DNA of 64,000 nucleotides. Source: Macrostomum lignano. Taxonomy: Eukaryota. Where the stretch lies: positions 124,001 through 188,000 of the forward strand of contig NIVC01001293.1 in assembly GCA_002269645.1 (NCBI GenBank), in the 5' to 3' direction. The translations under genes and the position numbers were made by a program. Below the pieces are notes generated by a model. That model made no database searches. It was given only the letters and a program-made list of their open reading frames with translations, and was not told the DNA's origin. Positions within the stretch are counted from its first letter, which is position 1. Each line of letters starts with the position of its first letter. Shown here one piece after another: positions 7,805-56,088 of this stretch.

Positions 7805-8154
7805 GACGTAAATTTTGAACGACTCGTTGAAAGGATTTCGGCGTTTCGTTATCCCACTTAGCTGGCACCAATGAGGTGGGGGTGGAGAAGAAAATAAAAA
7901 GAAAAATTTGAAATTGGGAGAATAAAATTTGGGTTTGTCGTCGGCACGTAAAGCCGGAAAATTGTGCAATTGATGTGTTGATTCTTCTCCTTGGTTACTC
8001 CGTCTGCCGGGTCCTCAATTCCGGGGGGAGGGTAGTCGTAATCGTAGTCGAGCGGTCTAGTAGCGGCCCGAGTCGTTCAGAATGGGTCCTCAGACACCGT
8101 AAACTCGTAATTCGTCGAGGATTGCTAGTTGTGTTACTCTCAGTAGTAAAGTAG

Positions 8155-10320: not shown

Positions 10321-10496
10321 CATACATATGCAACCTTGGGAATCACTCAGCTATTTCTATTGGCAACATACACATGTAAGTCACTATTGGCTAAGAGTAG
10401 TCATGTGACTATTTTATCTAATAGGCAATAGTGACTTACATGTGTATGTTGCCAATAAAAACAGCCAGGTTAATCCTTAGGTTATGCTTAAGCATG
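10321..10496. mobile_element. Foldback MITE (176 bp) with a perfect 32-bp internal inverted repeat
   Basis: Arms at 10358-10389 and 10426-10457 are exact reverse complements. Degenerate CAT...ATG termini. 8-bp TSD actatcct at 10313-10320 and 10497-10504. Confidence 0.8.
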
Positions 10497-11637
10497 ACTA
10501 TCCTAGAGAAAGAGAATTAGCAAAGCAGTTGATATTAGCCTCTAATAATCTGATCTAGGTTTTTTAGGCTAAGGTTGGAAATTCAGTTGCTAGCTAGTCC
10601 TTGGGGTTCAAAATCTAGTTGCCAATGGTTATTTTTTATTGCCCATTGGGTTGGCTATTGGATTGGGTTGAATATCCAAATTCTTGAGAATGAATATTTC
10701 TAAAGTTGCATTTAAAAAGCAGATTTTTTCTCTTAACTACAAGATTACTATATATACTGCAAACAATAACAAACAAATAATTTTATTATATCAATTCATA
10801 TCCATATGGCACTTTTATTACATTTACAAAATCATTTTTTGAAATTGTTAACTAGCATAAAGAAAATAAAGTTTGGCCTCTAATGCCAAAAATCCAGTTG
10901 CCAATAAGAGTTTTAAAGGGTCAAAAAAAACTATTTGGCCCAAAAACCTAGCTTTTGATTTTTGTATTGCCTATTATTATTTTAGTATTGATAATGATAG
11001 TTTTGACTATTGATATATTATTAAATATAGGCTTATATAAAATATGTGCATTAAACCTAGCTAATTATGTAAGCTATCCTGCTTAGGCCTAGCTAAATTA
11101 TAATTATAATTTAGTTATTAAATTATATAAGATTAGTTAAAACATTTGTGCAGATTTGGCAGTTCTCAAGAACTGGCATCTTTTTTAGCAGCTTCTACTG
11201 GTCTTAGTGCAATGATAGAGATGGTGCTAGAGATGGTCTTGGCGCATATGATTTCCCCCATAAACAGGAGCCCAGCATACATACAGTGCAACTACTGGCT
11301 GACCTAGTTAATCTGGATTGATTGCAATTTAAAAACTTTATTTTAATGTGGCAAATGGTTAAACATTAATAGTATTGAAAAGTTGCATAAGCCAGGTCAA
11401 CTGAGGAATGTCATTAACACCTTTGGCAAAAAACTTAAAATTAGCCTAATAGAATCTCAAAAGCTTGCCTCATGCCAATACTATTAGCTCATGACCCCAA
11501 AAGGAATAATGAGGCAGAATTATTCATGCAATCCATTGGTCGCACACAGAATCTTTGAATTAACATCTGCATAATGCATAATAAATGCATGCAATTAAAT
11601 CACACAGAGTCCAAGTCTGTTCGAAATCTCTCTTCAG

Positions 11638-14352
11638 AATTCGCTTAAAGCGCTACTATCAGTAGGCGAGTTGGCGCACTGTCGCGCCTTAGCTGCACCA
11701 CTGGCGCGCTGGAGCAGCAGCGACAGTTCAGCTGCCCAAAATCGTCGTCAGTCGCCATCGCGCGGCAACCGTCAACGACGCCTTGCCAAGAACGCTGACA
11801 ATGCCGTTGCTATGGCCAAATCCGAGTTGAACTCATCCGAACTGTTGGCTTCGAGCGCGGAGTCTGCTTTGGACGAACTGTCCGGCATGGTGGCTTCGCC
11901 AGCTCTTGCTTCTAGAATCGATGACAAACTGGCCGCTGCCAAACGTCGGACGCGTCGTTCGGCGGCTATTCGGGCCGCTGCAACTCGGTACCTGCCGGCG
12001 CTCGCTGCCGGGGAGGCCTCCGTGCTGCTCTACTGCGCTAGGAGGCAGGCCGTGCTGCTGCATCGATCCGATCCTGAGGTTTGTGTCTTCTTTGTGTCTG
12101 CAGCCTGGTTTGGGGTATCTTTGCTGCATGTGTTTGGGGTATCTTTGCTGCATGAGTTTGGGGTATTTTGCTGCATGTGTTTGAGGTATTTTTGCTGTCT
12201 GTTTTGGGGTATTTTGCTGCATGTGTTTGAGGTATTTTTGCTGTCTGTTTTGGGGTATTGTGCTGCATGTGTTTGAGGTATTTTTGCTGTCTGTTTTGGG
12301 GTATTGTGCTGCATGTGTTTGAGGTATTTTTGCTGTCTGTTTTGGGGTATTTGCTGCCTGTTTTGGGGTATTTTTGCTGCCTGTTTAGGGGTATTTTTGC
12401 TGCCTGTTTAGGGGTATTTTGCTGCCTGTTTTGGGGTATTTTTGCTGCCTATTTTGGGGTATTTTGCTGCCTGTTTAGGGGTATTTTGCTGCCTGTTTTG
12501 GGGTATTTGCTGCCTGTTTTGGGGTATTTTTGCTGCATGTGTTTGGGGTATTTTTGCTGTCTGTTTTGGGGTATTTGCTGCCTGTTTTGGGGTATTTTTG
12601 CTGCCTGTTTAGGGGTATTTTTGCTGCCTGTTTAGGGGTATTTTGCTGCCTGTTTTGGGGTATTTTTGCTGCCTATTTTGGGGTATTTTGCTGCCTGTTT
12701 AGGGGTATTTTGCTGCCTGTTTTGGGGTATTTGCTGCCTGTTTTGGGGTATTTTTGCTGCATGTGTTTGGGGTATTTTTGCTGCATGTGTTTGGGGTATT
12801 TTTGCTACCTGTTTAGGGGTATTTGGCTGTCTGTTCAAGGTTATTTTTGCAGTCTGTTTAGGGATATTTTACTGCCTGTTCAAGGGTATTTTCTGTTGAT
12901 AACAATGTCTTATTTCCTGCTGTTGATACTGAGGTCGGTTACTTTAGGCTAATGTATGTTATCTTAAATTACGCTTATGCAGTAAAACAAAGCATAAAAA
13001 GCCGGCAACATGCACCGCTCTGCCACTCCAACCCGCAGACGTGGCACCCGGCCTCCCTATCCCAAGCTTTTCCCCTAACCGAGGCCGCCGCCCGTCGCCT
13101 GCTTGCTGACTTTGTTGAACTGCGCTGGCCGGCTGACATTCAACGCTCCGACAATCAGATTCGGCTGCGAGTTTGGCCTCTGCTCGAACGGCCGTTGGAT
13201 GCCTCGAGATCCGGTCTGGCCTGGCTAAGAGAAGATGCCAGCAAACTGGGCCTGCTGCAGTTCTCTGCCGGCAATCCCGATCTGGCTTATTATTGTCACG
13301 AAGATGACGCAAATGCATCGAAACAGGAAAATCCCCAATCGCCGCTGCGTATGGGCGGAGAGGCCGGCCAGATGGAACGATTGGTGGCCGGATTTTACTG
13401 CGACGAGAATGGCTTTCTGGCTCAGGTGTGCAAATGCTTTGCCGATGTTGTATAAATAACTTTATAGAGCTGCATTTTTCATTGTGTAAATGCTTAGTTT
13501 GCCGATATGTTTTGTAAGTTACTTTACAAAGCTGAATATGTCTTCAACTCTTCATTATTTAAATGAATGTTTGCCGATATGTTGTGTAAATAACTTTACA
13601 AAGACAAATACGCATTCATTGCGTAAATAAATGCTAATTGCCGATGTGTTGTGTAAATAACTTTACAAATCTAAATACGTCTTCATTGTGTTCAAAATGA
13701 ATTCTTGCCGATATGTTGTGTAAATAACTTTACAAAGGCAAATACGCATTCATTGCGTAAATGAATGCTAATTGCCGATGTGTTGTGTAAATAACTTTAC
13801 AAATCTAAATACGTCTTCATTGTGTTCAAAATGAATTCTTGCCGATATGTTGTGTAAATAACTTTACAGAGCTGAATGCGTCTTCATTGTGTTCAAAATG
13901 AATTTTTGCCGATATGTTGTGTAAATAACTTTACAGAGTTGAATACGTCTTCATTGTGTTTAAAATGAATTTTTGCCGATATGTTGTGTAAATAACTTTA
14001 CAGAGCTGAATGCGTCTTCATTGTGTTCAAAATGAATTTTTGCCGATATGTTGTGTAAATAACTTTACAGAGCTGAATACGTCTTCATTGTGTAAATGAA
14101 TGCTAATTGCCCATTTGTTGTGTAAATTACTTTAAATTAAAAGGCCGCTGTGTCGTTTCCAATTCCCACTCGCAGGCTGAAGCAGCCCTGGCCTCGTCTC
14201 GGACGGATCTGGAAGCCGCTCGACAGGAGCTGTCGCTATTGGTGGCCAAACTGAGTCAGCGGAAGGCGGACTCGCCTGAATCGGAGAGATATCAATTCAA
14301 AAGGCGTTTGGAAGGATTTGACTTTAGCGAAAAGTTTATTTATGACAAATGA
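11638..14352 (+). CDS. Neugrin-like mitochondrial protein, paralog 1 (exons 11638-12078, 13039-13425, 14176-14352); no in-frame ATG at the start of exon 1
   Basis: All phase-0 GT-AG junctions. Splicing yields RQAVLLHRSDPE|TWHPASLSQAFPLTEAAARRLL, resembling the neugrin motif IRYLH..PE.W....LA..F.VS...IRR.L. N-terminus resembles a mitochondrial transit peptide. Confidence 0.65.
12110..12895. repeat. ~20-23-bp minisatellite in intron 1 of neugrin-like 1
   Basis: Tandem ttttggggtattttgctgcctg variants. Confidence 0.9.
13440..14130. repeat. ~60-bp minisatellite in intron 2 of neugrin-like 1
   Basis: About 11 copies of gccgatatgttgtgtaaataactttaca...tcttcattgtg...aatgaat. Confidence 0.9.
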
Positions 14353-14619
14353 AATTGGCCTAGTGTCTGCCTAGGTTTTTATGTATGATGTGCGTTTCAA
14401 CCAGTTAGCTTTTCTTTGTGTAATTTAGTGAACTCTGATAAATAACACCAACTGTTCCTCAATGTTACCATTTAGCTCCAAAACTTTACGGGGTTCCAGT
14501 TTTTTTTGTAGTTTAAGTGTTACAAATTGCTTGCTTGTGATTATAAAGTAGATAGATTTGCAGAACTAGACTTGATAGGTAGATTGATTAACGAACGGAG
14601 ACTTATGAACTAGATAATA

Positions 14620-15300
14620 GACCAGCGAAGTAGACTCAAGAAGTAGATAACAGACCAGCGAAGTAGACTCGAGAAGTAGATAACAGACCAGCGAAGTAGA
14701 CTCGAGTAGTAGATTACAGACCAGCGAAGTAGACTCGAGAAGTAGATAACAGACCAGCGGAAGTAGACTCGAGAAGTAGATAGCAGATCAGCTGAAGTAG
14801 ACTCGAGAAGTAGATAACAGATCAGCTGAAGTAGACTCGAGAAGTAGATAACAGATCAGCTGAAGTAGACTCGAGTAGTAGATTACAGACCAGCGAAGTA
14901 GACTCGAGAAGTAGATAACAGACCAGCGGAAGTAGACTCGAGAAGTAGATAACAGACCAGCTGAAGTAGACTCGAGAAGTAGATAACAGACCAGCTGAAG
15001 TAGACTCGAGAAGTAGATAACAGACCAGCTGAAGTAGACTCGAGAAGTAGATTACAGACCAGCGAAGTAGACTCGAGAAGTACATAACAGATCAGCTGAA
15101 GTAGACTCGAGAAGTAGATAACAGACCAGCTGAAGTAGACTCGAGAAGTAGATAACAGACCAGCTGAAGTAGACTCGAGAAGTAGATAACAGACCAGCTG
15201 AAGTAGACTCGAGAAGTAGATTACAGACCAGCGAAGTAGACTCGAGAAGTACATAACAGATCAGCTGAAGTAGACTCGAGAAGTAGATAACAGACCAGCG
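14620..15300. repeat. ~30-bp minisatellite
   Basis: Tandem gaagtagactcgagaagtagataacagaccagct variants. Confidence 0.92.
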
Positions 15301-15461: not shown

Positions 15462-17816
15462 ATGCGCGGTGTACTCTCCGCGCAATTGTCCTGCAGGACT
15501 TCAACAGCTTCAACACTTTGGCTGATTCACCAGCCTTCAAGAACTCTCTGCGTCGGCACTACTGATCACACTCAGTCAACTTCGTCTGCGCGAGATGCAA
15601 AATCTTACAAAAAGTATTCGAGTTTTATCAAATCAGAGCCCGCTCGCAAGCAGCTTTGCGTACTGACCCTGGGTGCCAAGTATCAGATACTACTGCTGAA
15701 CAGTACTAAATCGCCGGAGTTCACTGCTCGGAAATTGGCGAGACAGTTTCCTATTAGCGAGCAGGTGAGATAGTTTAGAGTCACTGAAAAGTTTAAGAGT
15801 GGTGATCAGTCACTCAAAAACTTCCACTTCTAGACACTGTGGGGAACAAGTGCCTGGGTATATGCAAAATCAAATAACTCTTACTGCAGCGGATCCTTTA
15901 GTGGCTTGTTGACATCTTGGTTTGGCTTAGGTGACTCGTTGCCTCCGGGAGTCCTCGACTTTTATCTGTGGGTCGACCAAAACGAGAGCGAATCAGAACT
16001 TCTTGACGGTCCTCGAGCTCGGAATTAACAATAGAACGTGCGCCCTAATGAACAATTGAATTCTCTAAGTTTCTGTGATAGGTCCTCCTGAAGGGTGGCT
16101 TCTTCGTTACGTCCGAAACGTAACGGATAACTCAATTAAATCAATAAATCCTCTAGGAATATCCTAGGAAACAAGGAGGCCTTTCTCAAATGTATCGACA
16201 ATGAACTGCTCTCGTATAACTCAATTAACCAACTTATTAACGCTAACAATCAAAGAACTCAATCCGGTAAACGCTTACCAATTGAACAAGTGTGGTCCCT
16301 CAGAGATTGGTCTTCTTCTTGTTCCTTCAGAGTCTTCTTAGAGACCGCTCTGAGTCTGAATTTTCGACTCGAATTTTCACTTATATGTATAGCAAAATTT
16401 TGGAGAAAAACCGGTTTGGGATTGTGTATTTACTTAGGTCAAAAATGTTTGATTAAGAGGTCATGCATGTTTGAACATTACCATATATGGAGTTAAACAA
16501 ATACAGCTGTTGAAATCCGGTTCCTTGATCAAACAATGTTAGATCCACGTGGGGCTCCAAATCACTCTGTTTACGCATGATTCCTAAAATAGATATGACT
16601 CATTCTAGAATAATTTGACTCTCTTAGAATATTACTCCAAGTAGAGCATTACGGTATGGTTTAATAACTCTCTACATCACGTGATTTTTTATCCTAGAAG
16701 GTCCACACCTTAGAGTGCTTAAGAGTGCTTCAATCTTAGAGTCCAGATCTCGAAGCTTAGAGTCCAGATCTCGAAGCTTAGAGTCCAGATCTCGAAGCTT
16801 AGAGTCCAGATCTCGAAGCTTAGAGTCCAGATCTCGAAGCTTAGAGTTCAGATCTCGAAGCTTAGAGTTCAGATCTCGAAGCTTAGAGTTCAGATCTCGA
16901 AGCTTAGAGTTCAGATCTCGAAGCTTAGAGTTCAGATCTCGAAGCTTAGAGCTCAGACTTAGAAGCTTAGAGTCCACACCTTGAAGCTTAGAGTCCAGAT
17001 CTTGAAGCTTAGAGTCCAGATCTCGAAGCTTAGAGTTCAGATCTCGAAGCTTAGAGTTCAGACTTAGAAGCTTAGAGTCCACACCTCGAAGCTTAGAGTT
17101 CAGGCTTAGAAGCTTAGAGTCCAGATCTCGAAGCTTAGAGTTCAGACCTTGAAGCTTAGAGTCCAGATCTCGAAGCTTAGAGTCCAGATCTCGAAGCTTA
17201 GAGTTCAGACCTTGAAGCTTAGAGTTCAGGCCTTGAAGCTTAGAGTTCAGGCCTTGAAGCTTAGAGTCCAGATCTCGAAGCTTAGAGTTCAGATCTCGAA
17301 GCTTAGAGTTCAGATCTCGAAGCTTAGAGTTCAGATCTCGAAGCTTAGAGTTGAGATCTCGAAGTTTAGAATTCAGATCATTCGTGCTTAGAATCCTGAC
17401 CAAAGAAATTGGAATTTTTATTGGTTCTAAGCAGACCACTTGATTTCCTTTCCCAACCTCATTCTCTCCCTACTCCGCCGCAGTCCTGCGCCAGTCTGCT
17501 GTCCTCCCTGCGCCAGAGGGAGCTGTCCCAGATGCTGTCCGACGCCAAACTGGTGGCCGATCACGACCTCATTGTCCGTCGCCGTTGGCGCTCAATCTGC
17601 CAGATGCTCCGTTCTAATCGGCGATTCTTAATTGGCTACAGGTGGCTGCAGGTGCTGGACAAGCTGCCGCTGATGCAGAACGCCTGCGGCCTGCACGAGC
17701 TGCCCGGCTACTCGGCTCCTGGCGACGACTGCCTGGCAGAGCTGGCGCGGCTCATGAACGAGTGGCGCCTGGCTCAGGAGAGAAGGCAGTTGGAGAGGCA
17801 GACAGCTGATTTATGA
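15462..17816 (+). CDS. Neugrin-like mitochondrial protein, paralog 2 (exons 15462-15764, 17484-17816)
   Basis: LTLGAKYQILLLNSTKSPEFTARKLARQFPISEQ matches the neugrin core pattern. Phase-0 intron 15765-17483. Arg/Ser-rich transit-like N-terminus MRGVLSAQLSCR. Confidence 0.65.
16735..17385. repeat. 21-bp minisatellite in the intron of neugrin-like 2
   Basis: About 30 copies of agatctcgaagcttagagt(t/c)c; the minus strand reads LRDLNSK heptads. Confidence 0.92.
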
Positions 17817-40415: not shown

Positions 40416-42581
40416 AAGCACATGAGGATGCGTTTATGCAAAAAATTATTCTTTTCTTTGTTGCCTCTTTTAACGGGGAGCAAAGATTGCTAGTCAAAAT
40501 TCTTGACTCGGTTAACATACGCTGTACTTTCGGCTACTAGGTATTCAAACAAACTTCTGAAACAAGCAAACTCTCAGCACAGCAGCCTGTACTCGTAGCT
40601 ATGTGAATCTCCTTACACTTATCGCGTCTTCCAAGTCCTCTGGGATCTCTAGCGGAGCCATGGCTGACCCCAGTTGCTTGGAATCCCTACCGCTGTCAGG
40701 CCTCGCGCACCGGCAGTGACGATCTCAAGTTAAAGCCTAGTTGTAATTAACTCACTAAATTTGAGTCTGCGCTGGCGTGTCGAGGTATCTTTGTGCTCAA
40801 ATTATATGTTCCTTTTTTAAAGCCCAGCAAGCGCTATACAGTAGGGGCACAGAGGACGAGGGTGGCAACCGTTTTTACTCTGTTAGTCAAGCCTGCCGTC
40901 GCAACTGTACGGCTGTCTATTTTGCCGAGCGTGACTAGGCGCCTGCCAGAGATTCCTATTGTCTGTTTTCTTTGCTCCTGCACTGCGACCTTGTCCATAA
41001 TTTTCTTATTCGGTTTGAAATTGTCTTATGATTCATCGCGTGTGCATTCGAGCTAAAAATTTGCCTGAGGGGGGGGGTAAATTGGAATGTAAAAGAATGG
41101 TGTATGTCGTGGAGTCCTATATAGAGAGCCTGATCTCTTTCTGACCCTCCGGCTTGGCTGAGGCAGAGGCTCTTGAGGAGACACGCCCTGCGAATGGCTA
41201 AGCTTGTCCCGAATTTACCCCCTCCCTCCTCGGAAAACTTGTGGTCGTACAATACCTAAAAACATCTTTTTTTTCTTTACCGACTACCTACCACACTCGT
41301 CTACCGCCATGCATAGATTTTGTCATCATATTAATGCTCTAAATAGAAGTTATTCTAAAAACTGCGAACTGCTCCAAGCGGGAGTATGCATAATTTCTGT
41401 GTGATATATTTCTATCGTTATTTAAAACTCATGTTACAAAATCTTTAAGCTTAATATATACACAATAAACATATGAATTTATATTTATATCTCAAAATGT
41501 GCAAATACGAACACAAAACAATTGATTTACAGTAAAAATCAGGAATCCCAATTGTCACTGACAGTCAAATTGATGAAATTCTATCGATTTCTTAAATACT
41601 CGTAACTCATTTGACCTCGCTTCTTGGAATAATTAATATTCAATATTCGTCATCGTTATTGGTGAATTCTATTATTAGTCGGAGGCCTTTTATAAAGCGA
41701 TAGGCACTCAAATGTTGTTGTCCTTTGATAGTGAATGGCTTTATTATGGTGTGTGAGTTTTATTTCTAACAAATTTTTATTTGAGCTTTTTAACACAAAA
41801 ATCTGCAGAAATTTTGACAGTCTTTAAACTCATAGACTTTATAATTTACCGTCTTTAAACAGATGTGGTCCACCCCTATGCAACGGCGTTCACTTTACAT
41901 TGATTAGTGTCGGGAAGTATTCTTAAAAGTCTGTTTTGCAACGTTATGTTATATTTTACCAGCACATTTCAGTATGGAATTTTGTTATGGTCTGAATATT
42001 TATAATACTCACAGTGAATCTGTACTGGATTTCAGATTCAATAGAAATTTCAATCATCGAAACGCATGCACCTGGTTCTGCACAATCATCTCGCAGTCGC
42101 AGGATCAAGATTGCACCTGTACACTTCGTTAGTGCGTCGAGGTCCCAGTCTGCTCCAGCAGCTCATGGTCGGTTTCGTGTATTGGCCGCCTTGCTGTCTC
42201 AGTAGACTGCTCTGTGTGAGTTGCTTTCCCTAACATTTCCATTCCATGACATTTTTCACTGGTCAGGCTTGGATGTATTCCCCCAAGAGCCAAACTGCTC
42301 TTTGATTATAAAAAATCCCGCAAAATACCCTAACTAGCCCAACTTCTAATATAAGCTACTAATAGTAGTGTAAAAGCGAATCTACATTACAAAGTAATAA
42401 ACCCTCTAAATCATGGTACACTACACTACACTCCCGACTCTTATACTCAATGAATTTTGTCTGAAGTCGATAGGAAATCGCTAGCATTTCGATAAAAGGC
42501 GTATTAAGCATTAAAAATAGGCACTTTACCTGATGTTCTCCACAACCTTCATCTTCCTTTAACCTTCAACAGTGCGCCTAC

Positions 42582-45500
42582 ATGCGCCGGCGCTACAGCA
42601 AAGCAGCTGCGGCAGCAACTGCTCAGAAGAAAAAGAAGCAATCGCAGTCAAGACCCACCCACTTCCTGGCCATGCAGGTCACCAACAAGGAGGTAATTAT
42701 GCAGACTATCAAATAGTAAAGTACTAGCATACTGAGCCCCCCTTGTGGGGCACTATTTACAAAAATAGAAGTTTCAACATGTATTAGTAAAAACATGGAC
42801 TAATGGAAATGAATAAATAAATTGAAATACAAATACCTATTTGTCTATCACTTAAAATGCTGTAGCAATAAGAAGAAAACTCATTCACCCATGACAAATG
42901 ACTCCATAGGAAGACAAATTCCTCCTTCAAGCATCAGTAATTAAATTCAGTCGGCTTATTAATACTCCCGATGCATAGTTAAGACCATAGATCTTATATT
43001 CCCTAGATAAGCCACTCACGACCATAAGCACACCCATAGAGCCTTCGTCTTTCTTGAAGATTTTGCGACCACGGTATCAGGTCAGTAGCTTGTGCGCGTA
43101 TTAATGGTTTTTTAATAATTAGATGGCAGGCGCAAGCCATACTTGCTTGCAGTCCGTGTAGCCCTTGTTTCGGAAAAAGGCTATGCCTGAATCCTATGAC
43201 TGAAAGGAGATTGACTTCAGGGTTGCTTAACGCTTTAATCCACTTCTGAGCAGCAGAGCCACTCCTAGGGAAGTTGTGCAGCGACATTTTGACTCAATTA
43301 CTTGTTGGTGGTGGCAATTTATGTATGCTGCAGCCCCGAATTCAGCGCTCTTTCGCCCATTTGTTTGATAAGCAAAGCGCAAGGTCGCGACGACCAGTGA
43401 CTTTGTGTCTGTTGCGAATATTCTTGTAACCACGAAAGAAATATGTCTATGTCCCTTTAAGCTACTGACCTCAGACTTTCTCAAACGCTGTCGTCTTAAA
43501 TAAATTTTTCTTGCAATTCGCGTGGTCGGTCTTTTCCTATTGAATGCACCAAGAGTGGCATATCTAGGGAATATAAGATCTATGGTTAAGACCCATAGAT
43601 TAGACTTCCAAAATTTCATATTAAAAAATAATCGAAAGATAAAAAAACACCAAAGAACCAAACGAAGACTGTCAGTATCTATATTTATATTTTGATTTCA
43701 ATGATGCAAACATATTATATATTTATATTTTATATTTTAATTCCTTCAAACCACTCAGTTGAGCAAAAAAAGCCTCTATGTGTCTCACAATATCACAATC
43801 ACAAACATCGCAAGAGTTTCACGGGCTTTCTAGGAATTCACTCACACTAAATAAGTTGAATCTTGATTCTGCTTACGCCTAGTTGATGGCTCTGGAGTGC
43901 TGGTCACTGGCTGCTGTTCATTTCGATTGAATGTTAACTGTAACAAAAGGAGTTCGGTAAATATATACAAATTGACTTGTTATATGAATTACTTTTTTAT
44001 TATATAAATAGCAATTAAATAATGCTTACCGATATTTCTCCAAATCGTAGCTGGATCTGCTCAACACTCCCGTAGTGCTGCAGAGCTTCTGGTGGATGCT
44101 CATAGACCAAAACCCTTGTACTGTCAGGCTGATGTGTTTGCGACTGCTGTTCCATCATGGACTGCGACGCCATAACGGGAGAGAACCCTAGTTCCTCTTT
44201 TTGGGCTTCATTAAACCACTTGCTCAACGATTTGTAATCATCAGAGTCGCATTTTCTAGCTTCCGTGCAGGTTAGCGTCACCATCCCGGCATATTCATGC
44301 ATCGCAGCTCTTCTGATCTCCAGAATGTCGCCGATGGACCACCATTGAACCTGGTCAGCTTTGTCGCCCCAGAATGCGCATTCCACGGACGACTTTGAAC
44401 TGTCCACCAGGGTCACCTTACTTAAGGCAACCATGCTCTGGTCCTTCTTCTGGACTTCTTTTCTTGGTGTGACAGCGGTTATCACCCCGACACATTTACA
44501 AGCCTGTAAAATTCGAATTTGGATAATAAATTTATAAATTCAGCAAAATTTTTATTGCCCATAGAATGCAAAAAATTAGCATATAATATTTGCTTACTTC
44601 TTCGAAGCCAAATTGCCTTTCAAAAATGTCTGTGAACTCAACTTGACGAGAGCTTACTAACTCATTGCTTAAAACGATACTGCCTTTGGAATCCATAGAC
44701 AGGGACACCTCCAACTTGTCAGTTCTGTTGTAGGTTGGATTCGACGACTTCACAAACCCGCCAGCAATGTGAACAACCTGGGCGCTCTTGCAGATGTCAT
44801 GCAGTGGCCGTAGCTCTTTGCCGAAGACACTGACCCGAATTTCGGCAGTCTCGTCTCCCAGAACAAAGGAGAACACCTGCGCTTTGCCTCCTTTGCTTTT
44901 AAAGTCCGAAACATTGCAGGGCTCTCCAATCACTCGGCCAGTAAAAGAACCTTGCATAGGGCCCAGCCGCAAGCCTTCGATGGACAGCTTCGGACGCTGG
45001 GACTCGCTCGCGTAATCGGTACCGGTGGCCATTTCTTGAAATTGATTGGAAAATTGACAGTAAAATCAATTAATATACTTAATAAATTCGATGCTGAAAA
45101 AGACTACATGTATGCACCGATTCAAAATTTTGCCCTTTAAGCAACAAAAAATAAGTTTAACTTACGAGAAAATGATCGCTGATGAATATTGCGAACTCGA
45201 GAACGAGATGAATAACAGATGAAAGACTGCCGTGAGTGCCAATTTAAGTAAATTATTTGGTACACTTGATTTGAATTTCTGGGAAGTTAGCTCGGCAAAC
45301 AAATGGTTAACAGAATAAAATAAGATTTGAACTTCCAGCAAATCATAAAACCCCCATACTTACCCATACCCAAATCCTTAGGGGCCACACAGCAAGTAAT
45401 AATACAGCTATACAGCTAACACCAGACGCTGATTCATCTCACTGCCACCCCCAGCCAATCGACCCCCCGCCTGGCCAGCTGCAAGGCGCTCTAAGACTTA

Positions 45501-48500: not shown

Positions 48501-51500
48501 AACGGTACGCTGCTCAGCCGTCAAATTGGACTCTCTTTCAGAAACAAAGTCACCGAGCTGTTCGGGGTTGTCAAACGCTGTCTCTTCAGCTGCAACTCGA
48601 CGAGGTTCAGGCAAACCATAATCAGCCAGGCCACTCGCTCCCATGGCAGCAGCGCGTTGCGCCAGATCAGCCAGAACTCCGTCATCCACTTCATCTTGGT
48701 CATCCAGCTTGCAGCGGTACGCAAAATCTTAACCCATTGCCGTTCGAAATCTTCTCCACAGGTCCAGAGTGTCAACTGCATCACCGTGCACGAGAATGAC
48801 GGAAAACAGGCACCTGAGCGCCGCAGGCATTTGTCTCCACAGCTTCTTCCATGCACAGGCGCCAATGCTGGTCATCTTCTAACAATCCCAGTGCTGGGCC
48901 AATTCACATCGCAAATTTGCAAGTCAGTCAGTCACTTAAGTCAGTCAGTCAGTCAGTCAGTCACTTAAGTCAGTCAGTCAGTCAGTCAGTCAGTCACTTA
49001 AGTCAGTCAGTCAGTCAGTCAGTCAGTCAGTCACTTAAGTCAGTCAGTCAGTCAGTCAGTCAGTCAGTCAGTCAGTCAGTCAGTCACTTAAGTCAGTCAG
49101 TCAGTCAGTCAGTCAGTCAGTCAGTCAGTCAGTCAGTCAGTCAGTCAGTCAGTCAGTCACTTAAGTCAGTCAGTCAGTCAGTCAGTCAGTCAGTCAGTTA
49201 CTTCAAGAGAAGTATATGAAATACAAAATCATGCTTTATCCCGTGCTCCTACTTCCAGTAGACACTGTCTGCATTCATCTCAAACATTTTTTTATTTTCC
49301 GCGACAGACCCGGTCAAATTTTGCCCAGCTGCAGCAGCAGTTTATCGACGCCAATCCGGCTATGAAGCGGGCTGCGGTGCCGGCCAGCAAGTTGCACGTG
49401 ACTTTGTTTGTGTGCACCCTGGCTGAGGAAGCTGATGTTGAACTGTGAGGCCCGCCGCTTGCCTATAAAATAGTCAAATATTCTTTATCTTTCGTTTTTC
49501 AATCTGTTCCTTTTCTCATCAGTTCTCATGAACTTGTTCTCATCAGTTCTCATGAACTTGTTCTCATCAGTTCTCATGAACTTGTTTTCATCGATTCTCA
49601 TGAACTTGTTCTCATCGATTCTCATGAACTTGTTCTCATTGACTCTCATGAACTTGTTCTCATCAGTTCTCATGAACTTGTTCTCATCGATTCTCATGAA
49701 CTTGTTCTCATCAGTTCTCATGAACTTGTTCTCATCGATTCTCATGAACTTGTTCTCATCGATTCTCATGAACTTGTTCTCATTGATTCTCATGAACTTG
49801 TTCTCATTGACTCTCATGAACTTGTTCTCATTGATTCTCATGAACTTGTTCTCATCGATTCTCATGAACTTGTTCTCATCGATTCTCATGAACTTGTTCT
49901 CATTGATTCTCATGAACTTGTTCTCATCAGTTCTCATGAACTTGTTCTCATCGATTCTGATGAACTTGTTCTCATCGATTTTCATGAACTTGTTTTCATT
50001 GATTCTCATGAACTTGTTCTCATTGACTCTCATGAACTTGTTCTCATCGACTCTCATGAACTTGTTCTCATCGACTCTCATGAACTTGTTCTCATTGACT
50101 CTCATGAACTTGTTCTCATCGACTCTCATGAACTTGTTCTCATCGATTCTCATGAACTTGTTCTCATCGACTCTCATGAACTTGTTCTCATCGATTCTCA
50201 TGAACTTGTTCTCATCGATTCTCATGAACTTGTTCTCATTGATTCTCATGAACTTGTTCTCATTGACTCTCATGAACTTGTTCTCATTGATTCTCATGAA
50301 CTTGTTCTCATCGATTCTCATGAACTTGTTCTCATCAGTTCTCATGAACTTGTTCTCATTGATTCTCATGAACTTGTTCTCATCAGTTCTCATGAACTTG
50401 TTCTCATCGATTCTCATGAACTTGTTCTCATCGATTCTCATGAACTTGTTCTCATTGATTCTCATGAACTTGTTCTCATTGATTCTCATGAACTTGTTCT
50501 CATTGACTCTCATGAACTTGTTCTCATTGATTCTCATGAACTTGTTCTCATCGATTCTCATGAACTTGTTCTCATCGATTCTCATGAACTTGTTCTCATT
50601 GATTCTCATGAACTTGTTCTCATCAGTTCTCATGAACTTGTTCTCATCGATTCTCATGAACTTGTTCTCATCGATTCTCATGAACTTGTTCTCATTGACT
50701 CTCATGAACTTGTTCTCATTGACTCTCATGAACTTGTTCTCATCGATTCTCATGAACTTGTTCTCATCGACTCTCAAGAACTTGTTCTCATTGATTCTCA
50801 TGAACTTGTTCTCATCAGTTCTCATGAACTTGTTTTCATCGATTCTCATGAACTTGTTCTCATCGATTCTCATGAACTTGTTTTCATTGATTCTCATGAA
50901 CTTGTTCTCATTGACTCTCATGAACTTGTTCTCATCGACTCTCATGAACTTGTTCTCATCGACTCTCATGAACTTGTTCTCATTGACTCTCATAAACTTG
51001 TTCTCATCGACTCTCATGAACTTGTTCTCATCGATTCTCATGAACTTGTTCTCATCGACTCTCATGAACTTGTTCTCATTGACTCTCATGAACTTGTTCT
51101 CATCGACTCTCATGAACTTGTTCTCATCGATTCTCATGAACTTGTTCTCATAGACTCTCATGAACTTGTTCTCATCGATTCTCATGAACTTGTTCTCATC
51201 GATTCTCATGAACTTGTTCTCATCGATTCTCATGAACTTGTTCTCATTGACTCTCATGAACTTGTTCTCATTGATTCTCATTAACTTGTTCTCATCGATT
51301 CTCATGAACTTGTTCTCATCGACTCTCATGAACTTGTTCTCATTGACTCTCATGAACTTGTTCTCATCAGTTCTCATGAACTTGTTCTCATCGATTCTCA
51401 TGAACTTGTTCTCATCGATTCTCATGAACTTGTTCTCATTGATTCTCATGAACTTGTTCTCATTGATTCTCATGAACTTGTTCTCATAGACTCTCATGAA

Positions 51501-52811
51501 CTTGTTCTCATTGATTCTCATGAACTTGTTCTCATCGATTCTCATGAACTTGTTCTCATCGATTCTCATGAACTTGTTCTCATTGATTCTCATGAACTTG
51601 TTCTCATCGATTCTCATGAACTTGTTCTCATCGATTCTCATGAACTTGTTCTCATTGATTCTCATGAACTTGTTCTCATTGATTCTCATGAACTTGTTCT
51701 CATCAGTTCTCATGAACTTGTTTTCAATCTGTTCTCATGAACTTGTTCTCAATCTGTTCTCGTGAACCTGTTTTCAATGTGTTCTCATGGACTTGTTCTC
51801 AATCTTTTCTCATTGACCTGTTCTCAATCTTTTCTCATGGACCCGTTCTCAATCTGTTCTCATGGACTTGTTCTCAATCTTTTCTCATGGACCCGTTCTT
51901 AATCTTTTCTCATGGACCCGTTCTCAATCTTTTCTCATGGACTTGTTCTCAATCTTTTCTCATGGACCCGTTCTTAATCTTTTCTCATGGACCCGTTCTC
52001 AATCTTTTCTCATGGACCCGTTCTTAATCTTTTCTCATGGACCCGTTCTCAATCTTTTCTCATGGACCCGTTCTTAATCTTTTCTCATGGACCCGTTCTC
52101 AATCTTTTCTCATGGACCCGTTCTTAATCTGTTCTCATGGACCCGCTCTCAATCTGTTCTCATGGACCCGTTCTCAATCTTTTCTCATGGACCCGTTCTC
52201 AATCTGTTCTCATGGACCCGTTCTCAATCTGTTCTCATGGACCCGTTCTTAATAAGATTAGCAATAAATTCCAGCTGCAGTCCCACCGCAGTCAGTCACT
52301 CTCTCCCATCCAATCCAATTGCAGAGCCAAGCAGACCCTGCAGGATTCGTTGAACTCAGTCGCCGCGCCAGCGCCCGGCCTCGAGCTGCAGTTCCTCGGC
52401 GTCGATTCCTTCAACCGGCGTGTCCTGTTTGTGCCTCTAGTGGAGAACCCGGCCCTGGCCTGGCTTCGGCGTGCTCGCAACCAGTTGATGACGTCATTCG
52501 TTGACGCCGGCCTGAAAGTGGAAGCCGATCGGCAGCCCGGCTCCGTCTGGAAGCCCCACCTGACAGTGGCAAAGTGCAGCCGTCTGCCCCGAGGTCAGCA
52601 GCGACTGTGCCGGCTAAATGCGGACTGTCTGGCTGCCGACCGCGGCTGTGACATTGGCTGCCAGGCCTTGGAGTCTGTGCAGCTGTGCAGCATGGCTGAG
52701 TCTGACTCGGCTACCGGCTATTATCAAGTGCTGACTGACCGGCGGCTTGACAATTTGACTGTCAGTGACAATTTGACAGTCAGTGACAATTTGACTGTCA
52801 GTGACAAGTGA
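42582..52811 (+). CDS. AKAP7-like 2H phosphoesterase, paralog 1 (exons 42582-42692, 49308-49444, 52325-52811)
   Basis: KKKKQSQSRPTHFLAMQVTNKE | ...KLHVTLFVC | ...WKPHLTVAK...VQLCSM...GYY. Both H-x-T motifs present; intron phases 0 and 2 are consistent. Confidence 0.85.
42986..43584 (-). mobile_element. Non-autonomous P-element-like transposon with a THAP remnant, nested in the Helitron
   Basis: Perfect 24-bp TIR catagatcttatattccctagata, 8-bp TSD gttaagac (42978-42985, 43585-43592), and THAP-like SLHNFP....QKWIKAL. Confidence 0.8.
43846..45032 (-). CDS. RPA70-like tandem OB-fold ssDNA-binding protein carried by the Helitron (exons 45032-44598, 44503-~44031, probably ~43941-43846)
   Basis: FTGRVI...FSFVLGDETAEIRVSVFG and GVITAV...VTLVDSS...VECAFWG resemble RPA1 DBD-A and DBD-B. 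Phase-0 intron; no stops. Confidence 0.8.
45690..46600. repeat. 128-bp tandem repeat (~7 copies) inside the Helitron
   Basis: Period 128 bp (e.g. 45799 to 45927), with near-identical units. Confidence 0.93.
47058..48900 (-). pseudogene. Helitron RepHel C-terminal half (Pif1-family helicase), disrupted, with a 77-nt intron at 47823-47899
   Basis: LGLLEDDQHW..CMEEA, DAAGGTGKS, IVWDEAAM, GDFRQLL, FPVRLCFAITIHKSQGQS, HGQLYVALSR. Frameshifts and a stop occur upstream of Walker A. Confidence 0.92.
48923..49198. repeat. (CAGT)n microsatellite punctuated by cacttaag
   Basis: Direct reading. Confidence 0.97.
49500..52250. repeat. 24-bp minisatellite (~93 copies) grading into a related ~25-bp repeat; fills intron 2 of AKAP7-like 1
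   Basis: ctcatgaacttgttctcatcgatt, then ctcatggacccgttctcaatctttt. Confidence 0.97.
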
Positions 52812-53547
52812 CTGTCAGTGACAATTGACTGTCAGTGACAATTTGACTGTCAGTGACAATTTGACTGTCAGTGACAATTTGACTGTCAGTGACAATTTGA
52901 CTGTCAGTGCCAATTTGACTGTCAGTGCCAATTTGACTGTCAGTGACAATTTGACTGTCAGTGACAATTTGACTGTCAGTGACAATTGACTGTCAGTGTC
53001 AATTTGACTGTCAGTGACAATTTGACTGTCAGTGACAATTGACTGTCAGTGACAATTTGACTGTCAGTGACAATTGACTGTCAGTGACAATTGACTGTCA
53101 GTGACAATTTGACTGTCAGTGACAATTTGACTGTCAGTGACAATTTGACTGTCAGTGACAATTGACTGTCAGTGACAATTGACTGTCTGACAATTTGACT
53201 GTCAGTGCCAATTTGACTGTCAGTGACAATTGACTGTCAGTGACAATTTGACTGTCAGTGCCAATTTGACTGTCAGTGACAATTGACTGTCAGTGACAAT
53301 TTGACTGTCAGTGCCAATTTGACTGTCAGTGCCAATTTGACTGTCCGTGACATTTGACTGTCAGTGACAATTGACTGTCAGTGAAAATTGACTGTCAGTG
53401 ACAATTGACTGTCAGTGACAATTGACTGTCAGTGACAATTTGACTGTCAGTGACAATTTGACTGTCAGTGACAATTTGACTGTCAGTGACAATTTGACTG
53501 TCAGTGACAATTGACTGTCAGTGACGATTGACTGTCAGTGACAATTG
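52750..53547. repeat. 18/19-bp palindromic minisatellite; also present at 21447-21587 and 41549-41572
   Basis: ttgactgtcagtgacaat(t) with an internal TGTCA-g-TGACA palindrome. Confidence 0.95.
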
Positions 53548-53844
53548 GGATTCCTGATTTTTACTGTAAATCAATTGTTTTGTGTTCTTATTTGCACATT
53601 TTGAGATATAAATATAAATGCATATGTTTATTGTGTATATATTAAGCTTAAAGATTTTGTAAACATGAGTTTTAAATAGAGCATTTTGTTACTTTTAAAT
53701 TAGACTTTGTTATTAAAAGGGTTCTGCACTTAACTCGCACAGGGTTACAGTTGGAGGGGGTTGGCCCTCATAGTGTCCATGAATCGGTTTTTTACAATTT
53801 ATCAATATCAGCAAAAATATTGGATGAAGCTCTAATATTTCCAG

Positions 53845-56088
53845 GCATCTGTCGCTGCAGACGTTGCCTCAGAAAAGGCACCGGTGAAAGCCGCTAACTC
53901 GCAAAACAGGAGCTCTGAGTCATCTCCTACTCACTTCATCGCTGTGCAGATTAGCAATCCAGAGGTTTGTGTACATGGCAGGCATAAATATTCCTGTTGA
54001 ATCGGCTGATTGTGAAATTATGCTGAATATCCACCCCGTACCCATAGATAATCCCCATCCCAAACCCATAGATAATCCCCATCCCGAACCCATAGATAGT
54101 CCCCATCCCAAAGCCATAGACAATCCCCATCCCAAACCCATAAATAATCCCCATCCCAAACCTATAGATAATCCCTATCCCGAACCCATAGATAATCCCC
54201 ATCCCGAACCCACCAATAATTCCCATCCCAAACCCATAGATAATTTCCATCCCAAACCCATAAATAATCCCCACCCCAAACCCACCAATAATTCCTATCC
54301 CAAACCCATAGATAATCCCCATCCCAAACCCATAGATAATCCCCAACCCAAAGCCATAGATAATCCCAATCCCAAACCCATAGATAATCCCCATCCCAAA
54401 CCCATAGATAATCCCCAACCAAAGCCATAGATAATCCCCATCCCGAAACCATAGATAATCTCCATCCCAAACCCATAGATAATCCCCATCCTAAACCCAT
54501 AGATAATCCCCATCCTAAACCCATAGAAAATCCATATCCCGAACGCAGATAATCCCCAACCCAAAGCCATAGGTACGCTCCTAACAATACATAATCCAAC
54601 CATGCTAATTGCAGACAAAGTCTTGGCTAGGCAGTTTGCAGCAAAAGCTGAGGCACTCTGGTCAGGTGAGTGCGGTAGCACTCTTACCTGTTGAGGAGCT
54701 GCACATAACTCTATTCGTCTGCTGTTTGGACAGCAAAGAAGGGCTAGCTAAGTGAGTTAATATTTTAGTCTCACTTCACGTTTTTAACAAAGCTGTTCTT
54801 TAAATACTAGCAGATTTCAAAATCTCAATACAGAAAGATAAATTTCTAGTTTTTTTAATCCTTGACCAAGATGTTAGTCGATTTTAGTTTGCTCAAGTTT
54901 ATTTCAAACAGTCGATTGTAATTGGAAATTAAAACTCTGTTACTGAACAAACGAAGAGTTTTTGCATGCTTCGGTTGTGATTTGGACTGCAATAGTCAGC
55001 ACTTAAATTTAAAAGTAGAGCGCCTACTCTTTTTCAGTAGTTTTTCTGCGCAGTGAGACTAAAATTTAATTTGGTAGCTAAAATTGTCTTTCCTTCGGGT
55101 CGGAGTTAGAGGCCTCAGAAGCTTAATGGAGTTAAACGCATTTAAATCGATGTACAGAAGTGAACCCAAGACGGACGAAACTCAATCTAGGGAGGGGAGG
55201 AGGGGCAGGCCCAATTTAGCTCAGCCAATAAGAGAGCAGTAAGGAGAGAGGTCAAAGTCAGTCGGACGAAACTCAGCCTAGGGGGCAGGCCCAATCTAGC
55301 TCAGCCAATGAGAGAGCAGTAAGGAAAGAGGTCAGAATCAGACAGACGAAACTCAGCCTATGGGGCAGGCCCAATCTAGCTCAGGCAATGAGAGAGCAGT
55401 AAGGAAAGAGGTCAGAATCTGACGGACGAAACTCAGCCTAGGGGGCAGGCCCAATCTAGCTCAGGCAATGAGAGAGCGGTAAGGAAAGACAAGCACAGAC
55501 AAACGGTCGAAAGGAAAGCCACACTGTTTATCGGCCTGGCTGGGGGCTGGGGCGCCACCCCTTTTTCTCTCTTGCTCGCTATGCATACGGGTTCATGGAA
55601 CATTGTCACATCTATCCCATTTTGCAAGCAGGGCTCGGCAAATCATGGAGTCTGTAGATTCAATCCGACCCGACAGCCAGTTAGTTACTGAAGAAAGTTT
55701 AGACAGTCGGCTATTGAAATTATCAGGCATCGGAGCTTTCAATCGTCAAGTGCTGTTTGTGCGGCTGGCCGAGAATGCCGCACTGAATGACCTGCGCGTC
55801 GTGAGAGACCGCCTGCTGGCGGAGTTCATCGCGGCTGGACTGAGCGCTGATGCGAGTAGAGACGGGCCTGGAGGATGGAAGCCGCACCTGACTCTGGCCA
55901 AGGCCAGCCGACTGCCCTGGGGGCGGCAGCGGCGTCAGTGCCGGCTGACTGCCGCCCTGCTGAAGGACAACGACAGTGAGGTTGGCTGGCAAAGCTTCGA
56001 CTGTCTGCAGCTGTGCAGCATGGAGCGCGACGGCCAGACTGGCTATCAAGGTCAATTGCGAGCGACGGTTCCAAAATATTTAAATTGA
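53845..56088 (+). CDS. AKAP7-like 2H phosphoesterase, paralog 2 (exons 53845-53964, 54615-54751, 55632-56088); no ATG in exon 1
   Basis: SPTHFIAVQISNPE | ...ELHITLFVC | ...WKPHLTLAK...LQLCSM. Same intron phases and the same 137-nt middle exon as paralog 1. Confidence 0.85.
54035..54570. repeat. 24-bp intronic minisatellite
   Basis: cccatagataatccccatcccaaa variants. Confidence 0.92.
55170..55490. repeat. ~78-bp tandem repeat (4 copies), intronic
   Basis: gacgaaactcagccta.ggggcaggcccaatctagctcag.caatgagagagcagtaagg... Confidence 0.85.

What the first reader, a model, noticed from the sequence alone, without database searches (positions are those of the whole stretch)
11625..11730. Genes apparently built to receive their start codon from a trans-spliced leader
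Seen: neugrin-like 1 opens at acceptor ctctcttcag|AAT TCG CTT (11638), and AKAP7-like 2 at atttccag|GCA TCT GTC (53845). Neither has an in-frame ATG after the nearest upstream in-frame stop. Adding one AUG in phase 0 gives natural N-termini: MNSLKALLSVGELAHCRALAAPLARWSS (transit-peptide-like) and MASVAADVASEK. The 5' acceptors of the other two paralogs (15438 and 42573) are also in frame with their own ATG. Known: flatworm spliced leaders end in AUG, which can act as the initiator. Inference: SL-supplied initiation, with tandem paralogs possibly resolved from polycistronic RNA.
Basis: partly seen in the sequence, partly recalled or inferred. Interest (0 to 1): 0.75.

Follow-up and report, generated by a model that had tools for sequence, protein, structure and literature searches.

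The report
Spliced-leader AUG starts two flatworm genes
In this Macrostomum lignano (flatworm) region, a neugrin-like gene and probably an AKAP7-like gene have no start codon of their own at the front of the reading frame and most likely borrow the AUG that ends the trans-spliced leader, a mechanism already described in flatworms, so this is a good example rather than a discovery.

Summary
The window is Macrostomum lignano, assembly Mlig_3_7, scaffold NIVC01001293.1, about 124001-188000. One correction: neugrin-like 1 has an in-frame ATG 58 codons into exon 1, at 11812.

The species' single 35-nt spliced leader (SL) ends in ATG. Three lines of indirect RNA evidence support trans-splicing at 11638:
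- The NCBI coding sequences of both neugrin-like genes are marked "partial" and begin on the first base after the acceptors.
- The two genes are named g1 and g2 of one transcriptional unit.
- In the homeologous scaffold, the 7 nt before the junction read TTGCATG, the SL's 3' end, instead of TCTTCAG. This is most likely a trace of SL-bearing RNA-seq reads, because the assembly was polished with RNA-seq data.

The 58 codons ahead of the internal ATG are open only in the SL-AUG frame, differ between the two copies mostly at synonymous sites, and are basic like a mitochondrial presequence.

AKAP7-like 2 has no methionine before residue 205 of 222, yet its Pfam domain starts at residue 28. There is no RNA evidence for this gene.

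SL-AUG initiation is known in flatworms (Cheng et al. 2006). These are new members of a known kind, of low interest.

The parts
11628..11637 (+). SL trans-splice acceptor of neugrin-like 1 (tctctcttcag; CTTCAG fits the [T/C]TNCAG motif)
   Evidence: Sequence. Motif from PMC8629364. The homeolog CDS starts at the next base. In L001 these bases are replaced by the SL 3' end TTGCATG. GC rises from about 0.38 upstream to about 0.59 downstream of the junction.
11638..11811 (+). 58 codons translated only if the SL AUG initiates (NSLKALL...NAVA). Basic and presequence-like.
   Evidence: Only frame 0 is open. Homeolog differences are 3 synonymous to 1 non-synonymous, with no indels. Net charge is +7, against -4 for the 30 residues after the internal Met.
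11638..12078 (+). Neugrin-like 1 exon 1 (147 codons, donor GAG|GTTTGT). Alternative in-frame ATG at 11812.
   Evidence: P0001 is 99% identical.
13039..13425 (+). Neugrin-like 1 exon 2 (129 codons). It is skipped in the 205-aa NCBI model of the homeolog and present in the UniRef model.
14176..14352 (+). Neugrin-like 1 last exon, with stop TGA at 14350-14352.
14607..15299 (.). 34-nt minisatellite in the spacer between the two neugrin-like genes. Stop to next acceptor is 1085 nt, or 392 nt without the repeat.
   Evidence: Operon criterion is under 1 kb after removing repeats (PMC8629364).
15438..15767 (+). Neugrin-like 2 exon 1. Acceptor cattccag|TTG, own ATG at 15462, and 8 codons between acceptor and ATG that are in frame with an SL AUG.
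   Evidence: The NCBI CDS PAA69766.1 (Mlig031532g2, partial) starts at 15438.
17484..17816 (+). Neugrin-like 2 exon 2, ending with the stop codon.
42573..42692 (+). AKAP7-like 1 exon 1 (40 codons). Acceptor ttcaacag|TGC, own ATG at 42582 (codon 4).
49308..49444 (+). AKAP7-like 1 exon 2 (137 nt), carrying the first HxT motif (HVT).
52325..52811 (+). AKAP7-like 1 exon 3, carrying the second HxT motif (HLT). The stop at 52809-52811 lies inside an 18-nt repeat array.
52748..53546 (.). 18-nt minisatellite in the spacer between the AKAP7-like genes. Stop to next acceptor is 1033 nt, or 298 nt without the repeat.
53837..53844 (+). Putative SL acceptor of AKAP7-like 2 (atttccag; TTCCAG fits [T/C]TNCAG). 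An in-frame TAA lies 4 codons upstream.
   Evidence: No RNA evidence was obtainable.
53845..53964 (+). AKAP7-like 2 exon 1 (40 codons, no ATG). Same length and phase as paralog 1 exon 1. Pfam domain position 1 maps to residue 28.
54615..54751 (+). AKAP7-like 2 exon 2 (137 nt, the same length as in paralog 1), with HIT motif.
55677..56088 (+). AKAP7-like 2 exon 3, with HLT motif and the stop codon. The acceptor is tentative: it is the most upstream phase-compatible AG.

Best explanation
These are SL trans-spliced Macrostomum lignano genes. Their first coding exon begins at a trans-splice acceptor in codon phase 0, so the AUG that ends the 35-nt spliced leader becomes the first codon of the ORF.

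Neugrin-like 1: the primary transcript is cut at 11637/11638 and joined to ...UUGCAUG. Ribosomes scanning from the SL cap meet that AUG first and make MNSLKALL..., a basic N-terminus of about 58 residues that probably acts as a mitochondrial presequence. The internal AUG at 11812 could give a shorter product by leaky scanning.

Neugrin-like 2, 1.1 kb downstream, is cut out of the same transcriptional unit by a second SL addition at 15438, in the manner of an operon.

AKAP7-like 2 is predicted to work the same way at 53845. Here the dependence looks obligatory, because no other Met precedes the 2H-phosphoesterase domain. Its paralog AKAP7-like 1 has the same exon structure but keeps its own ATG at codon 4.

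Shown (indirectly, from annotation and assembly): SL addition at 11638 and 15438, and one transcriptional unit for the neugrin pair.
Inferred: use of the SL AUG by ribosomes, the presequence function, and everything about RNA processing of the AKAP7-like pair.
For: 1. Species and SL. The best protein hit is M. lignano BOX15_Mlig011006g1 at 99% identity. The SL ends in ATG, 30% of genes are trans-spliced, and the SL-acceptor motif is [T/C]TNCAG (PMC8629364).

2. Annotation boundaries. P0001 ('partial') starts NSLKALL, the first codon after the acceptor. The g2 CDSs start at the first base after CAG in both copies. Gene boundaries in this annotation come from SL-read peaks (TBONE; PMC5730564).

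3. SL trace in the assembly. Window and L001 are about 98% identical around the junction, but 5 consecutive bases differ, turning TCTTCAG into TTGCATG, which matches the SL end. It is the only SL-suffix site that differs between the copies. Mlig_3_7 was Pilon-polished with RNA-seq reads.

4. Coding signal ahead of the internal ATG. Only the SL-AUG frame is open. Substitutions are 3 synonymous to 1 non-synonymous, against 4 to 1 in the rest of the exon, with no indels, while the upstream flank has several. Net charge is +7, against -4 for the internal-Met start.

5. AKAP7-like 2. Pfam AKAP7_NLS position 1 maps to residue 28 of exon 1. There is no Met until residue 205. Both HxT motifs and all splice sites are intact. 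Exon 1 has the same 120-nt length and phase as in the paralog. No GTRAG donor occurs in the 1033 nt back to the paralog's stop.

6. Operon criteria. g1/g2 naming indicates one transcriptional unit. Repeat-adjusted spacers are 392 nt and 298 nt, under the 1 kb criterion.

7. Precedent. The SL AUG serves as initiator in S. mansoni (Cheng et al. 2006, as summarised in PMC9851317, PMC12582326 and PMC5832876). The Macrostomum SL's final ATG is described as a translation start codon in PMC10468722.
Against: - No read, cDNA, ribosome footprint or peptide was seen directly. The SL junction is inferred from annotation boundaries and from what I interpret as a polishing artefact.
- Neugrin-like 1 has an in-frame AUG at 11812 that could be the real or a co-used start.
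- The SL AUG has a weak -3 context (U), so leaky scanning is plausible.
- The substitution counts are tiny (4 sites; p about 0.06).
- The mitochondrial argument rests on a weak neugrin assignment (E about 1e-4; no Pfam hit).
- Neither AKAP7-like gene is in the protein collection, so I have no evidence that AKAP7-like 2 is expressed or trans-spliced.
- The window's own neugrin-like 1 has no CDS on record.
Confidence: 0.8

Rival explanations
1. The SL is added at 11638, but neugrin-like 1 is translated from its own AUG at 11812. On this reading the 58 in-frame codons upstream are 5'UTR that happens to be open, or yield only a minor extended isoform.
For: There is an in-frame ATG at 11812. The SL AUG has U at -3, which is a weak context (SL sequence). 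Being open and in frame by chance is not very rare, at about 0.05. In S. mansoni the SL AUG is in frame in only 28% of trans-spliced mRNAs, close to chance (PMC9851317).
Against: The SL AUG is the first AUG on the mRNA, and an out-of-frame ATG at 11801 sits just before 11812. The segment evolves like the coding part of the exon and has no indels. A start at 11812 gives an acidic N-terminus (net -4), which is unlike a mitochondrial protein.
Confidence: 0.12
2. An unannotated upstream exon, cis-spliced to 53845 (or to 11638), supplies the ATG. On this reading the acceptors are ordinary internal acceptors.
For: No RNA evidence exists for AKAP7-like 2. Flatworm acceptors are often shared between cis- and trans-splicing (PMC12582326). 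Two ATG...|GTAAG candidates lie upstream of 11638, at 10328-10375 and 10994-11068.
Against: For 11638, the annotated transcript starts exactly at the acceptor and the homeolog carries the SL end there. Candidate 1 loses its frame in L001. Candidate 2 has diverged about 8%, against 2% for the exon, mostly at non-synonymous sites. For 53845, the 1033-nt spacer holds no GTRAG donor and only 2 phase-compatible ATG...GT candidates.
Confidence: 0.1
3. AKAP7-like 2 is a decaying tandem duplicate that has lost its start codon (Met at codon 4 in paralog 1, Ala in paralog 2) and is not translated.
For: It has no ATG. Its Pfam score is weaker than the paralog's (83 against 118 bits). No protein is on record.
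Against: The ORF is intact across three exons with canonical splice sites and conserved exon lengths. Both catalytic HxT motifs are kept. Paralog 1, which has an ATG, is equally absent from the collection, so absence there is uninformative.
Confidence: 0.1
4. The TTGCATG in the homeologous scaffold is a real allele rather than a polishing artefact. On this reading one genomic copy has acquired the SL's 3' end, including the ATG, by RNA-templated conversion, and is now a conventional gene.
For: Both copies come from the same assembly, and only one carries the change. A full SL sequence has been reported in the genome at the 5' end of another trans-spliced gene (PMC8629364).
Against: Only the 7 nt next to the junction match the SL, and the flank is otherwise colinear. 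That fits end-to-end read mismatches better than recombination. The assembly is documented as polished with RNA-seq. The annotated transcript still begins after the ATG.
Confidence: 0.06

Closest known systems
Flatworm SL 3'-terminal AUG as initiator methionine (Schistosoma mansoni; Cheng, Cohen, Ndegwa & Davis, J Biol Chem 2006; known to me through PMC9851317, PMC12582326 and PMC5832876)
   Same: The SL ends in AUG. The acceptor sits in phase 0 of an ORF that lacks a suitable start of its own. More than 40 schistosome cDNAs were reported to need the SL AUG.
   Different: The species is different: a free-living macrostomorph. Translation from the SL AUG was tested experimentally in the schistosome work and is only inferred here. 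I found no per-gene catalogue for M. lignano in the papers I searched.
M. lignano SL trans-splicing and operons (Wudarski et al. 2017, PMC5730564; Ustyantsev & Berezikov 2021, PMC8629364)
   Same: Same SL and same acceptor motif. The g1/g2 genes are cut from one transcriptional unit. Spacers are under 1 kb once repeats are removed, and are inflated by minisatellites as those authors describe.
   Different: In the text I read, those papers do not discuss the SL AUG as a start codon. Their annotation trims the SL and so leaves such genes as 5'-partial CDSs.
slORFs, ORFs created by SL addition (slORFfinder, PMC9851317)
   Same: An ORF whose start codon lies in the leader.
   Different: That tool's demonstrated cases use near-cognate NUG codons in nematode, trypanosome and Oikopleura leaders, supported by ribosome footprints. 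No footprint data were used here.
C. elegans SL2-type operon processing
   Same: The downstream gene of a polycistronic precursor is released by SL addition a short distance after the upstream 3' end.
   Different: M. lignano uses a single SL for all positions. Nematode SLs do not end in AUG and do not supply the initiator.

Membership tests
SL-AUG-initiated trans-spliced mRNA (flatworm type) | The organism has a spliced leader whose last three bases are AUG | tested here: met
   Organism identified as M. lignano. SL sequence ends in ATG (PMC8629364; PMC10468722). No SL RNA gene lies in the window.
SL-AUG-initiated trans-spliced mRNA (flatworm type) | The SL is actually joined to the mRNA at the proposed acceptor | tested here: met
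   Met for 11638 and 15438, by indirect evidence only: the CDSs start at the acceptor and are flagged partial, TBONE sets boundaries from SL-read peaks, and the SL 3' end sits at the junction in L001. For 53845 and 42573 no RNA-derived evidence could be obtained.
SL-AUG-initiated trans-spliced mRNA (flatworm type) | The SL AUG is in frame with the main ORF with no intervening stop | tested here: met
   True at all four acceptors.
SL-AUG-initiated trans-spliced mRNA (flatworm type) | No genomic AUG can give the full-length conserved protein | tested here: inconclusive
   Met for AKAP7-like 2: the domain starts at residue 28 and the first Met is residue 205. Not met in the strict sense for neugrin-like 1, which has an in-frame ATG at 11812 upstream of the region that aligns with neugrin relatives (about residues 98-198).
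SL-AUG-initiated trans-spliced mRNA (flatworm type) | Ribosomes initiate at the SL AUG (footprints, N-terminal peptides or a reporter assay) | not testable with these tools
   No Ribo-seq or proteomic data were accessible. The only support is indirect: the coding-like substitution pattern and composition.
M. lignano operon (criteria of Ustyantsev & Berezikov 2021) | Adjacent same-strand genes, the downstream one SL trans-spliced, with a repeat-adjusted spacer under 1 kb | tested here: met
   Neugrin pair: 392 nt after removing the 693-nt repeat, g2 starts at the acceptor, and g1/g2 belong to one transcriptional unit. AKAP7 pair: the distance criterion is met at 298 nt, but trans-splicing of the downstream gene is not shown.
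AKAP7 2H phosphoesterase domain (Pfam PF10469) | Score above the Pfam gathering threshold and two HxT/S motifs | tested here: met
   83.3 and 118.2 bits against a cut-off of 24.4. Motifs are HIT/HLT and HVT/HLT.
Neugrin (Pfam PF06413) | Score above the Pfam gathering threshold | tested here: not met
   No Pfam hit even at E up to 10. Only remote similarity to two proteins that do pass PF06413 (E 1.8e-4 and 7.2e-4; pairwise 1e-5 for paralog 2). 'Neugrin-like' is therefore a lead, not a membership.

The most novel reading that the evidence does not exclude
The TTGCATG at the homeologous junction is a genuine genomic allele. An RNA-templated conversion has written the spliced leader's terminal AUG into one gene copy, destroying the acceptor and turning an SL-dependent start into a genome-encoded one. 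That would be a route by which trans-spliced genes revert to conventional genes. A milder version: after tandem duplication AKAP7-like 2 lost its own ATG because the in-frame SL AUG made it redundant, a ratchet towards obligatory trans-splicing.
Probability: 0.06. Interest if true: 0.6.

Novelty: new member of a known kind. Interest (0 to 1): 0.25.

Why it matters
There are two practical points.

1. Annotation. In Macrostomum and other flatworm annotations that trim the SL, genes of this kind appear as 5'-partial CDSs, or get no CDS at all. The window's own neugrin-like 1 and both AKAP7-like genes have none on record. Restoring the SL AUG gives complete proteins and, for neugrin-like 1, a different predicted N-terminus and possibly a different localisation.

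2. Assembly quality. Polishing a genome with RNA-seq reads in an organism that trans-splices can overwrite acceptors with the SL's 3' end. That creates false genomic ATGs and destroys real splice sites, and it is worth screening for across Mlig_3_7.

Biologically, the paralog pair with and without its own ATG is a neat illustration of how an AUG-terminated leader relaxes selection on genomic start codons. The mechanism itself has been known since 2006.

Tried and rejected
- Protein search for AKAP7-like 2 found nothing. A search for the secreted-protein-like ORF at 60073-61251, meant as a handle to fetch the homeologous AKAP7 locus, also found nothing. I therefore could not check annotation boundaries or SL traces at 42573 or 53845.
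- Pfam gave no support for 'neugrin'. The exhaustive representative search gave only two weak neugrin relatives.
- I scanned the window and L001 for other matches to the SL suffix. All except the neugrin-like 1 junction are identical in both copies, so they are chance genomic matches. This includes the ATTGCATG at the start of the lectin-like ORF at 24569.
- There is no SL RNA gene in the window.
- I looked for the locus tags, NGRN and AKAP7 in supplements and full text and found nothing.
- I listed candidate upstream cis-exons carrying an ATG. None is convincing.
- The [T/C]TNCAG motif does not separate trans- from cis-acceptors in this window, so I gave it little weight.
- The hydrophobic moment does not distinguish the two candidate N-termini (0.31 against 0.34). 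Only charge does.
Full report
**What the window is**

The translated exon at 11638-12078 hits one NCBI protein at 99% identity: 'hypothetical protein BOX15_Mlig011006g1, partial [Macrostomum lignano]'. An exact look-up of the downstream gene's product returned scaffold NIVC01001293.1 of assembly GCA_002269645.1 (Mlig_3_7). The fetched locus is base-for-base identical to window 5438-27816. The window is therefore NIVC01001293.1, about 124001-188000. A second, homeologous copy of the neugrin region lies on NIVC01000024.1 (locus L001). M. lignano is a hidden polyploid whose assembly keeps duplicated copies (PMC8629364).

**Checking the observation**

The sequence is as described.
- Acceptors: ctctcttcag|AATTCG puts the first exon base at 11638, and atttccag|GCATCT puts it at 53845.
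- Upstream stops: in-frame stops lie 14 and 4 codons upstream, with no ATG in between.
- Paralogs: their acceptors at 15438 and 42573 are in frame with their own ATGs, at codons 9 and 4.

One statement needs correcting. Neugrin-like 1 does have an in-frame ATG inside exon 1, at 11812, the 59th codon. AKAP7-like 2 truly lacks one. In the 3-exon model, which I built by comparison with its paralog, the only Met is residue 205 of 222. The Pfam AKAP7_NLS domain begins at residue 28 of exon 1 in both paralogs.

The gene names differ in strength. The AKAP7 assignment is firm. 'Neugrin' is not supported by Pfam. It rests on two remote relatives that are themselves Pfam neugrins (E 1.8e-4 and 7.2e-4) and on pairwise similarity.

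**Does the species have the right leader?**

Yes. M. lignano has one 35-nt SL, CGGTCTCTTACTGCGAAGACTCAATTTATTGCATG, which ends in ATG. About 30% of genes are trans-spliced and about 15% lie in operons. The motif most enriched at SL acceptors is [T/C]TNCAG (PMC8629364). Three of the four acceptors fit that motif, but so do some cis-acceptors here, so it carries little weight.

**Is the SL joined at 11638?**

I could not see reads, but three RNA-derived traces agree.

1. Annotation boundaries. The Mlig_3_7 annotation sets gene boundaries with TBONE, which cuts transcriptional units at peaks of SL-containing reads after trimming the SL, and then calls ORFs with TransDecoder (PMC5730564). The NCBI CDS of the homeolog's neugrin-like 1 is flagged 'partial' and starts NSLKALL, the very first codon after the acceptor. 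The CDS of neugrin-like 2 starts on the first base after CAG in both copies: PAA69766.1 in the window, and PAA93553.1 at L001 15513. A transcript model that starts exactly at an AG| boundary is what an SL site gives.

2. One transcriptional unit. The locus tags are Mlig011006g1 and g2. In this nomenclature, g1 and g2 are genes cut from a single transcriptional unit (supplementary legend of PMC5730564).

3. The SL's end in the other copy. Window and L001 are about 98% identical for hundreds of bases on both sides of the junction. The exception is five consecutive bases immediately upstream: the window reads TCTCTCTTCAG|AATTC and L001 reads TCTCTTGCATG|AATTC. TTGCATG is the last 7 nt of the SL. 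Background divergence consists of isolated single substitutions. Among all SL-suffix matches in L001, this is the only one that differs from the window. [quoted passage not shown] The simplest reading is that SL-bearing reads overwrote the acceptor in that copy. Either way, the sequence ...TTGCATG|AATTC... existed in the data. If instead it is a real allele, that copy encodes the same ATG at the same place.

**Is the SL AUG used?**

This is inference. The SL AUG would be the first AUG on the mRNA and is in frame. For the 174 nt between the acceptor and ATG 11812, the evidence is as follows.
- Only that frame is open; the other two have 2 stops each.
- GC jumps from about 0.38 to about 0.59 at the acceptor and stays at the level of the rest of the exon.
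- The two copies differ at 4 sites there, 3 of them synonymous, with no indels. The rest of the exon shows 4 synonymous to 1 non-synonymous, and the upstream flank has several indels.
- The chance of being in frame and open is about 0.05.
- The chance of at least 3 of 4 changes being synonymous is about 0.06, by my estimate.

Each item is weak, but they are concordant. The resulting N-terminus is basic (net +7 over 59 residues), while a start at 11812 gives net -4 over its first 30 residues. That fits a mitochondrial presequence if the protein really is a neugrin relative. Neugrin's mitochondrial location is established knowledge, not something tested here.

For AKAP7-like 2 the argument is structural.
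- The domain cannot be made without an upstream Met.
- Both HxT motifs, all splice sites and the exon lengths (120 and 137 nt, identical to the paralog's) are intact.
- The 1033-nt spacer back to the paralog's stop contains no GTRAG donor.
- No M. lignano AKAP7-like protein is on record, so expression and trans-splicing remain untested.

**Polycistronic origin**

For the neugrin pair, the g1/g2 naming and a spacer of 1085 nt, of which 693 nt is a 34-nt minisatellite, meet the published operon criterion of under 1 kb after repeat removal. For the AKAP7 pair, only the distance criterion is met: 1033 nt, or 298 nt without the 18-nt array.

**Comparison with what is known**

- Cheng et al. 2006 found the SL AUG in frame in 28% of S. 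mansoni trans-spliced mRNAs and required by more than 40 cDNAs (as summarised in PMC9851317; see also PMC5832876).

The mechanism is therefore known, including in this genus. What is new is only these particular genes. The M. lignano SL papers I read do not discuss SL-AUG initiation.

**'Built to receive'?**

The data do not require design. With a single AUG-terminated leader, any phase-0 acceptor makes the genomic ATG redundant. The AKAP7 paralogs have the same exon, one with Met and one with Ala at codon 4. That looks like neutral loss, or neutral gain, under that redundancy.

**Verdict**

SL addition at 11638 and 15438 is very likely, at about 0.95. Use of the SL AUG by neugrin-like 1 is likely, at about 0.8. 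The same mechanism for AKAP7-like 2 is plausible, at about 0.65, but has no RNA evidence behind it. These are new members of a known kind, of low general interest. There is a useful side finding about RNA-seq polishing artefacts and 5'-partial annotations.

Noticed in passing
L001 9994-10000 (NIVC01000024.1), against window 11631-11637: The Mlig_3_7 assembly carries the spliced leader's last 7 nt (TTGCATG) in place of a genomic splice acceptor in one of two homeologous copies. This is probably RNA-seq-driven Pilon mis-polishing, and it could be systematic at highly expressed trans-spliced genes.
   Followed up: partly
window 1875-7969 (-): An intact 1546-aa Ty3/gypsy-type pol ORF (protease, RT, RNase H, integrase by Pfam) in a GC-rich block. 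The window upstream of about 8800 does not align with the homeologous scaffold, which suggests an insertion difference between the copies. I did not extract or reconstruct the sequence.
   Followed up: partly
window 12080-12900, 13433-14134, 14607-15299, 39577-40540, 49485-51713, 52748-53546, 53990-54600, 58850-59990: Introns and spacers of these genes are packed with minisatellites (units of 18-67 nt). These produce long spurious ORFs on both strands (up to 742 aa) and vary in length between homeologous copies.
   Followed up: partly
window 52748-52811: The ORF of AKAP7-like 1 runs into the 18-nt repeat array and ends there, so its C-terminal LTVSDN-LTVSDN-LTVSDK is encoded by the minisatellite.
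   Followed up: no
window 23762-24571 (-) and 25586-26338 (+): Two C-type-lectin-like ORFs form a head-to-head inverted duplication, with arms up to 99% complementary and about 1.2 kb between the inner arms.
   Followed up: partly
window 11638-14352: The window's own neugrin-like 1 (expected tag Mlig031532.g1) has no CDS in the protein collection, although its homeolog does. The homeolog's 205-aa model skips exon 2 (13039-13425), whereas the UniRef model A0A1I8HV27 includes it. This is either alternative splicing or inconsistent annotation.
   Followed up: no
window 63290-63832 (-): An ORF with three C2H2 zinc-finger-like motifs at the edge of the window. I did not examine it.
   Followed up: no
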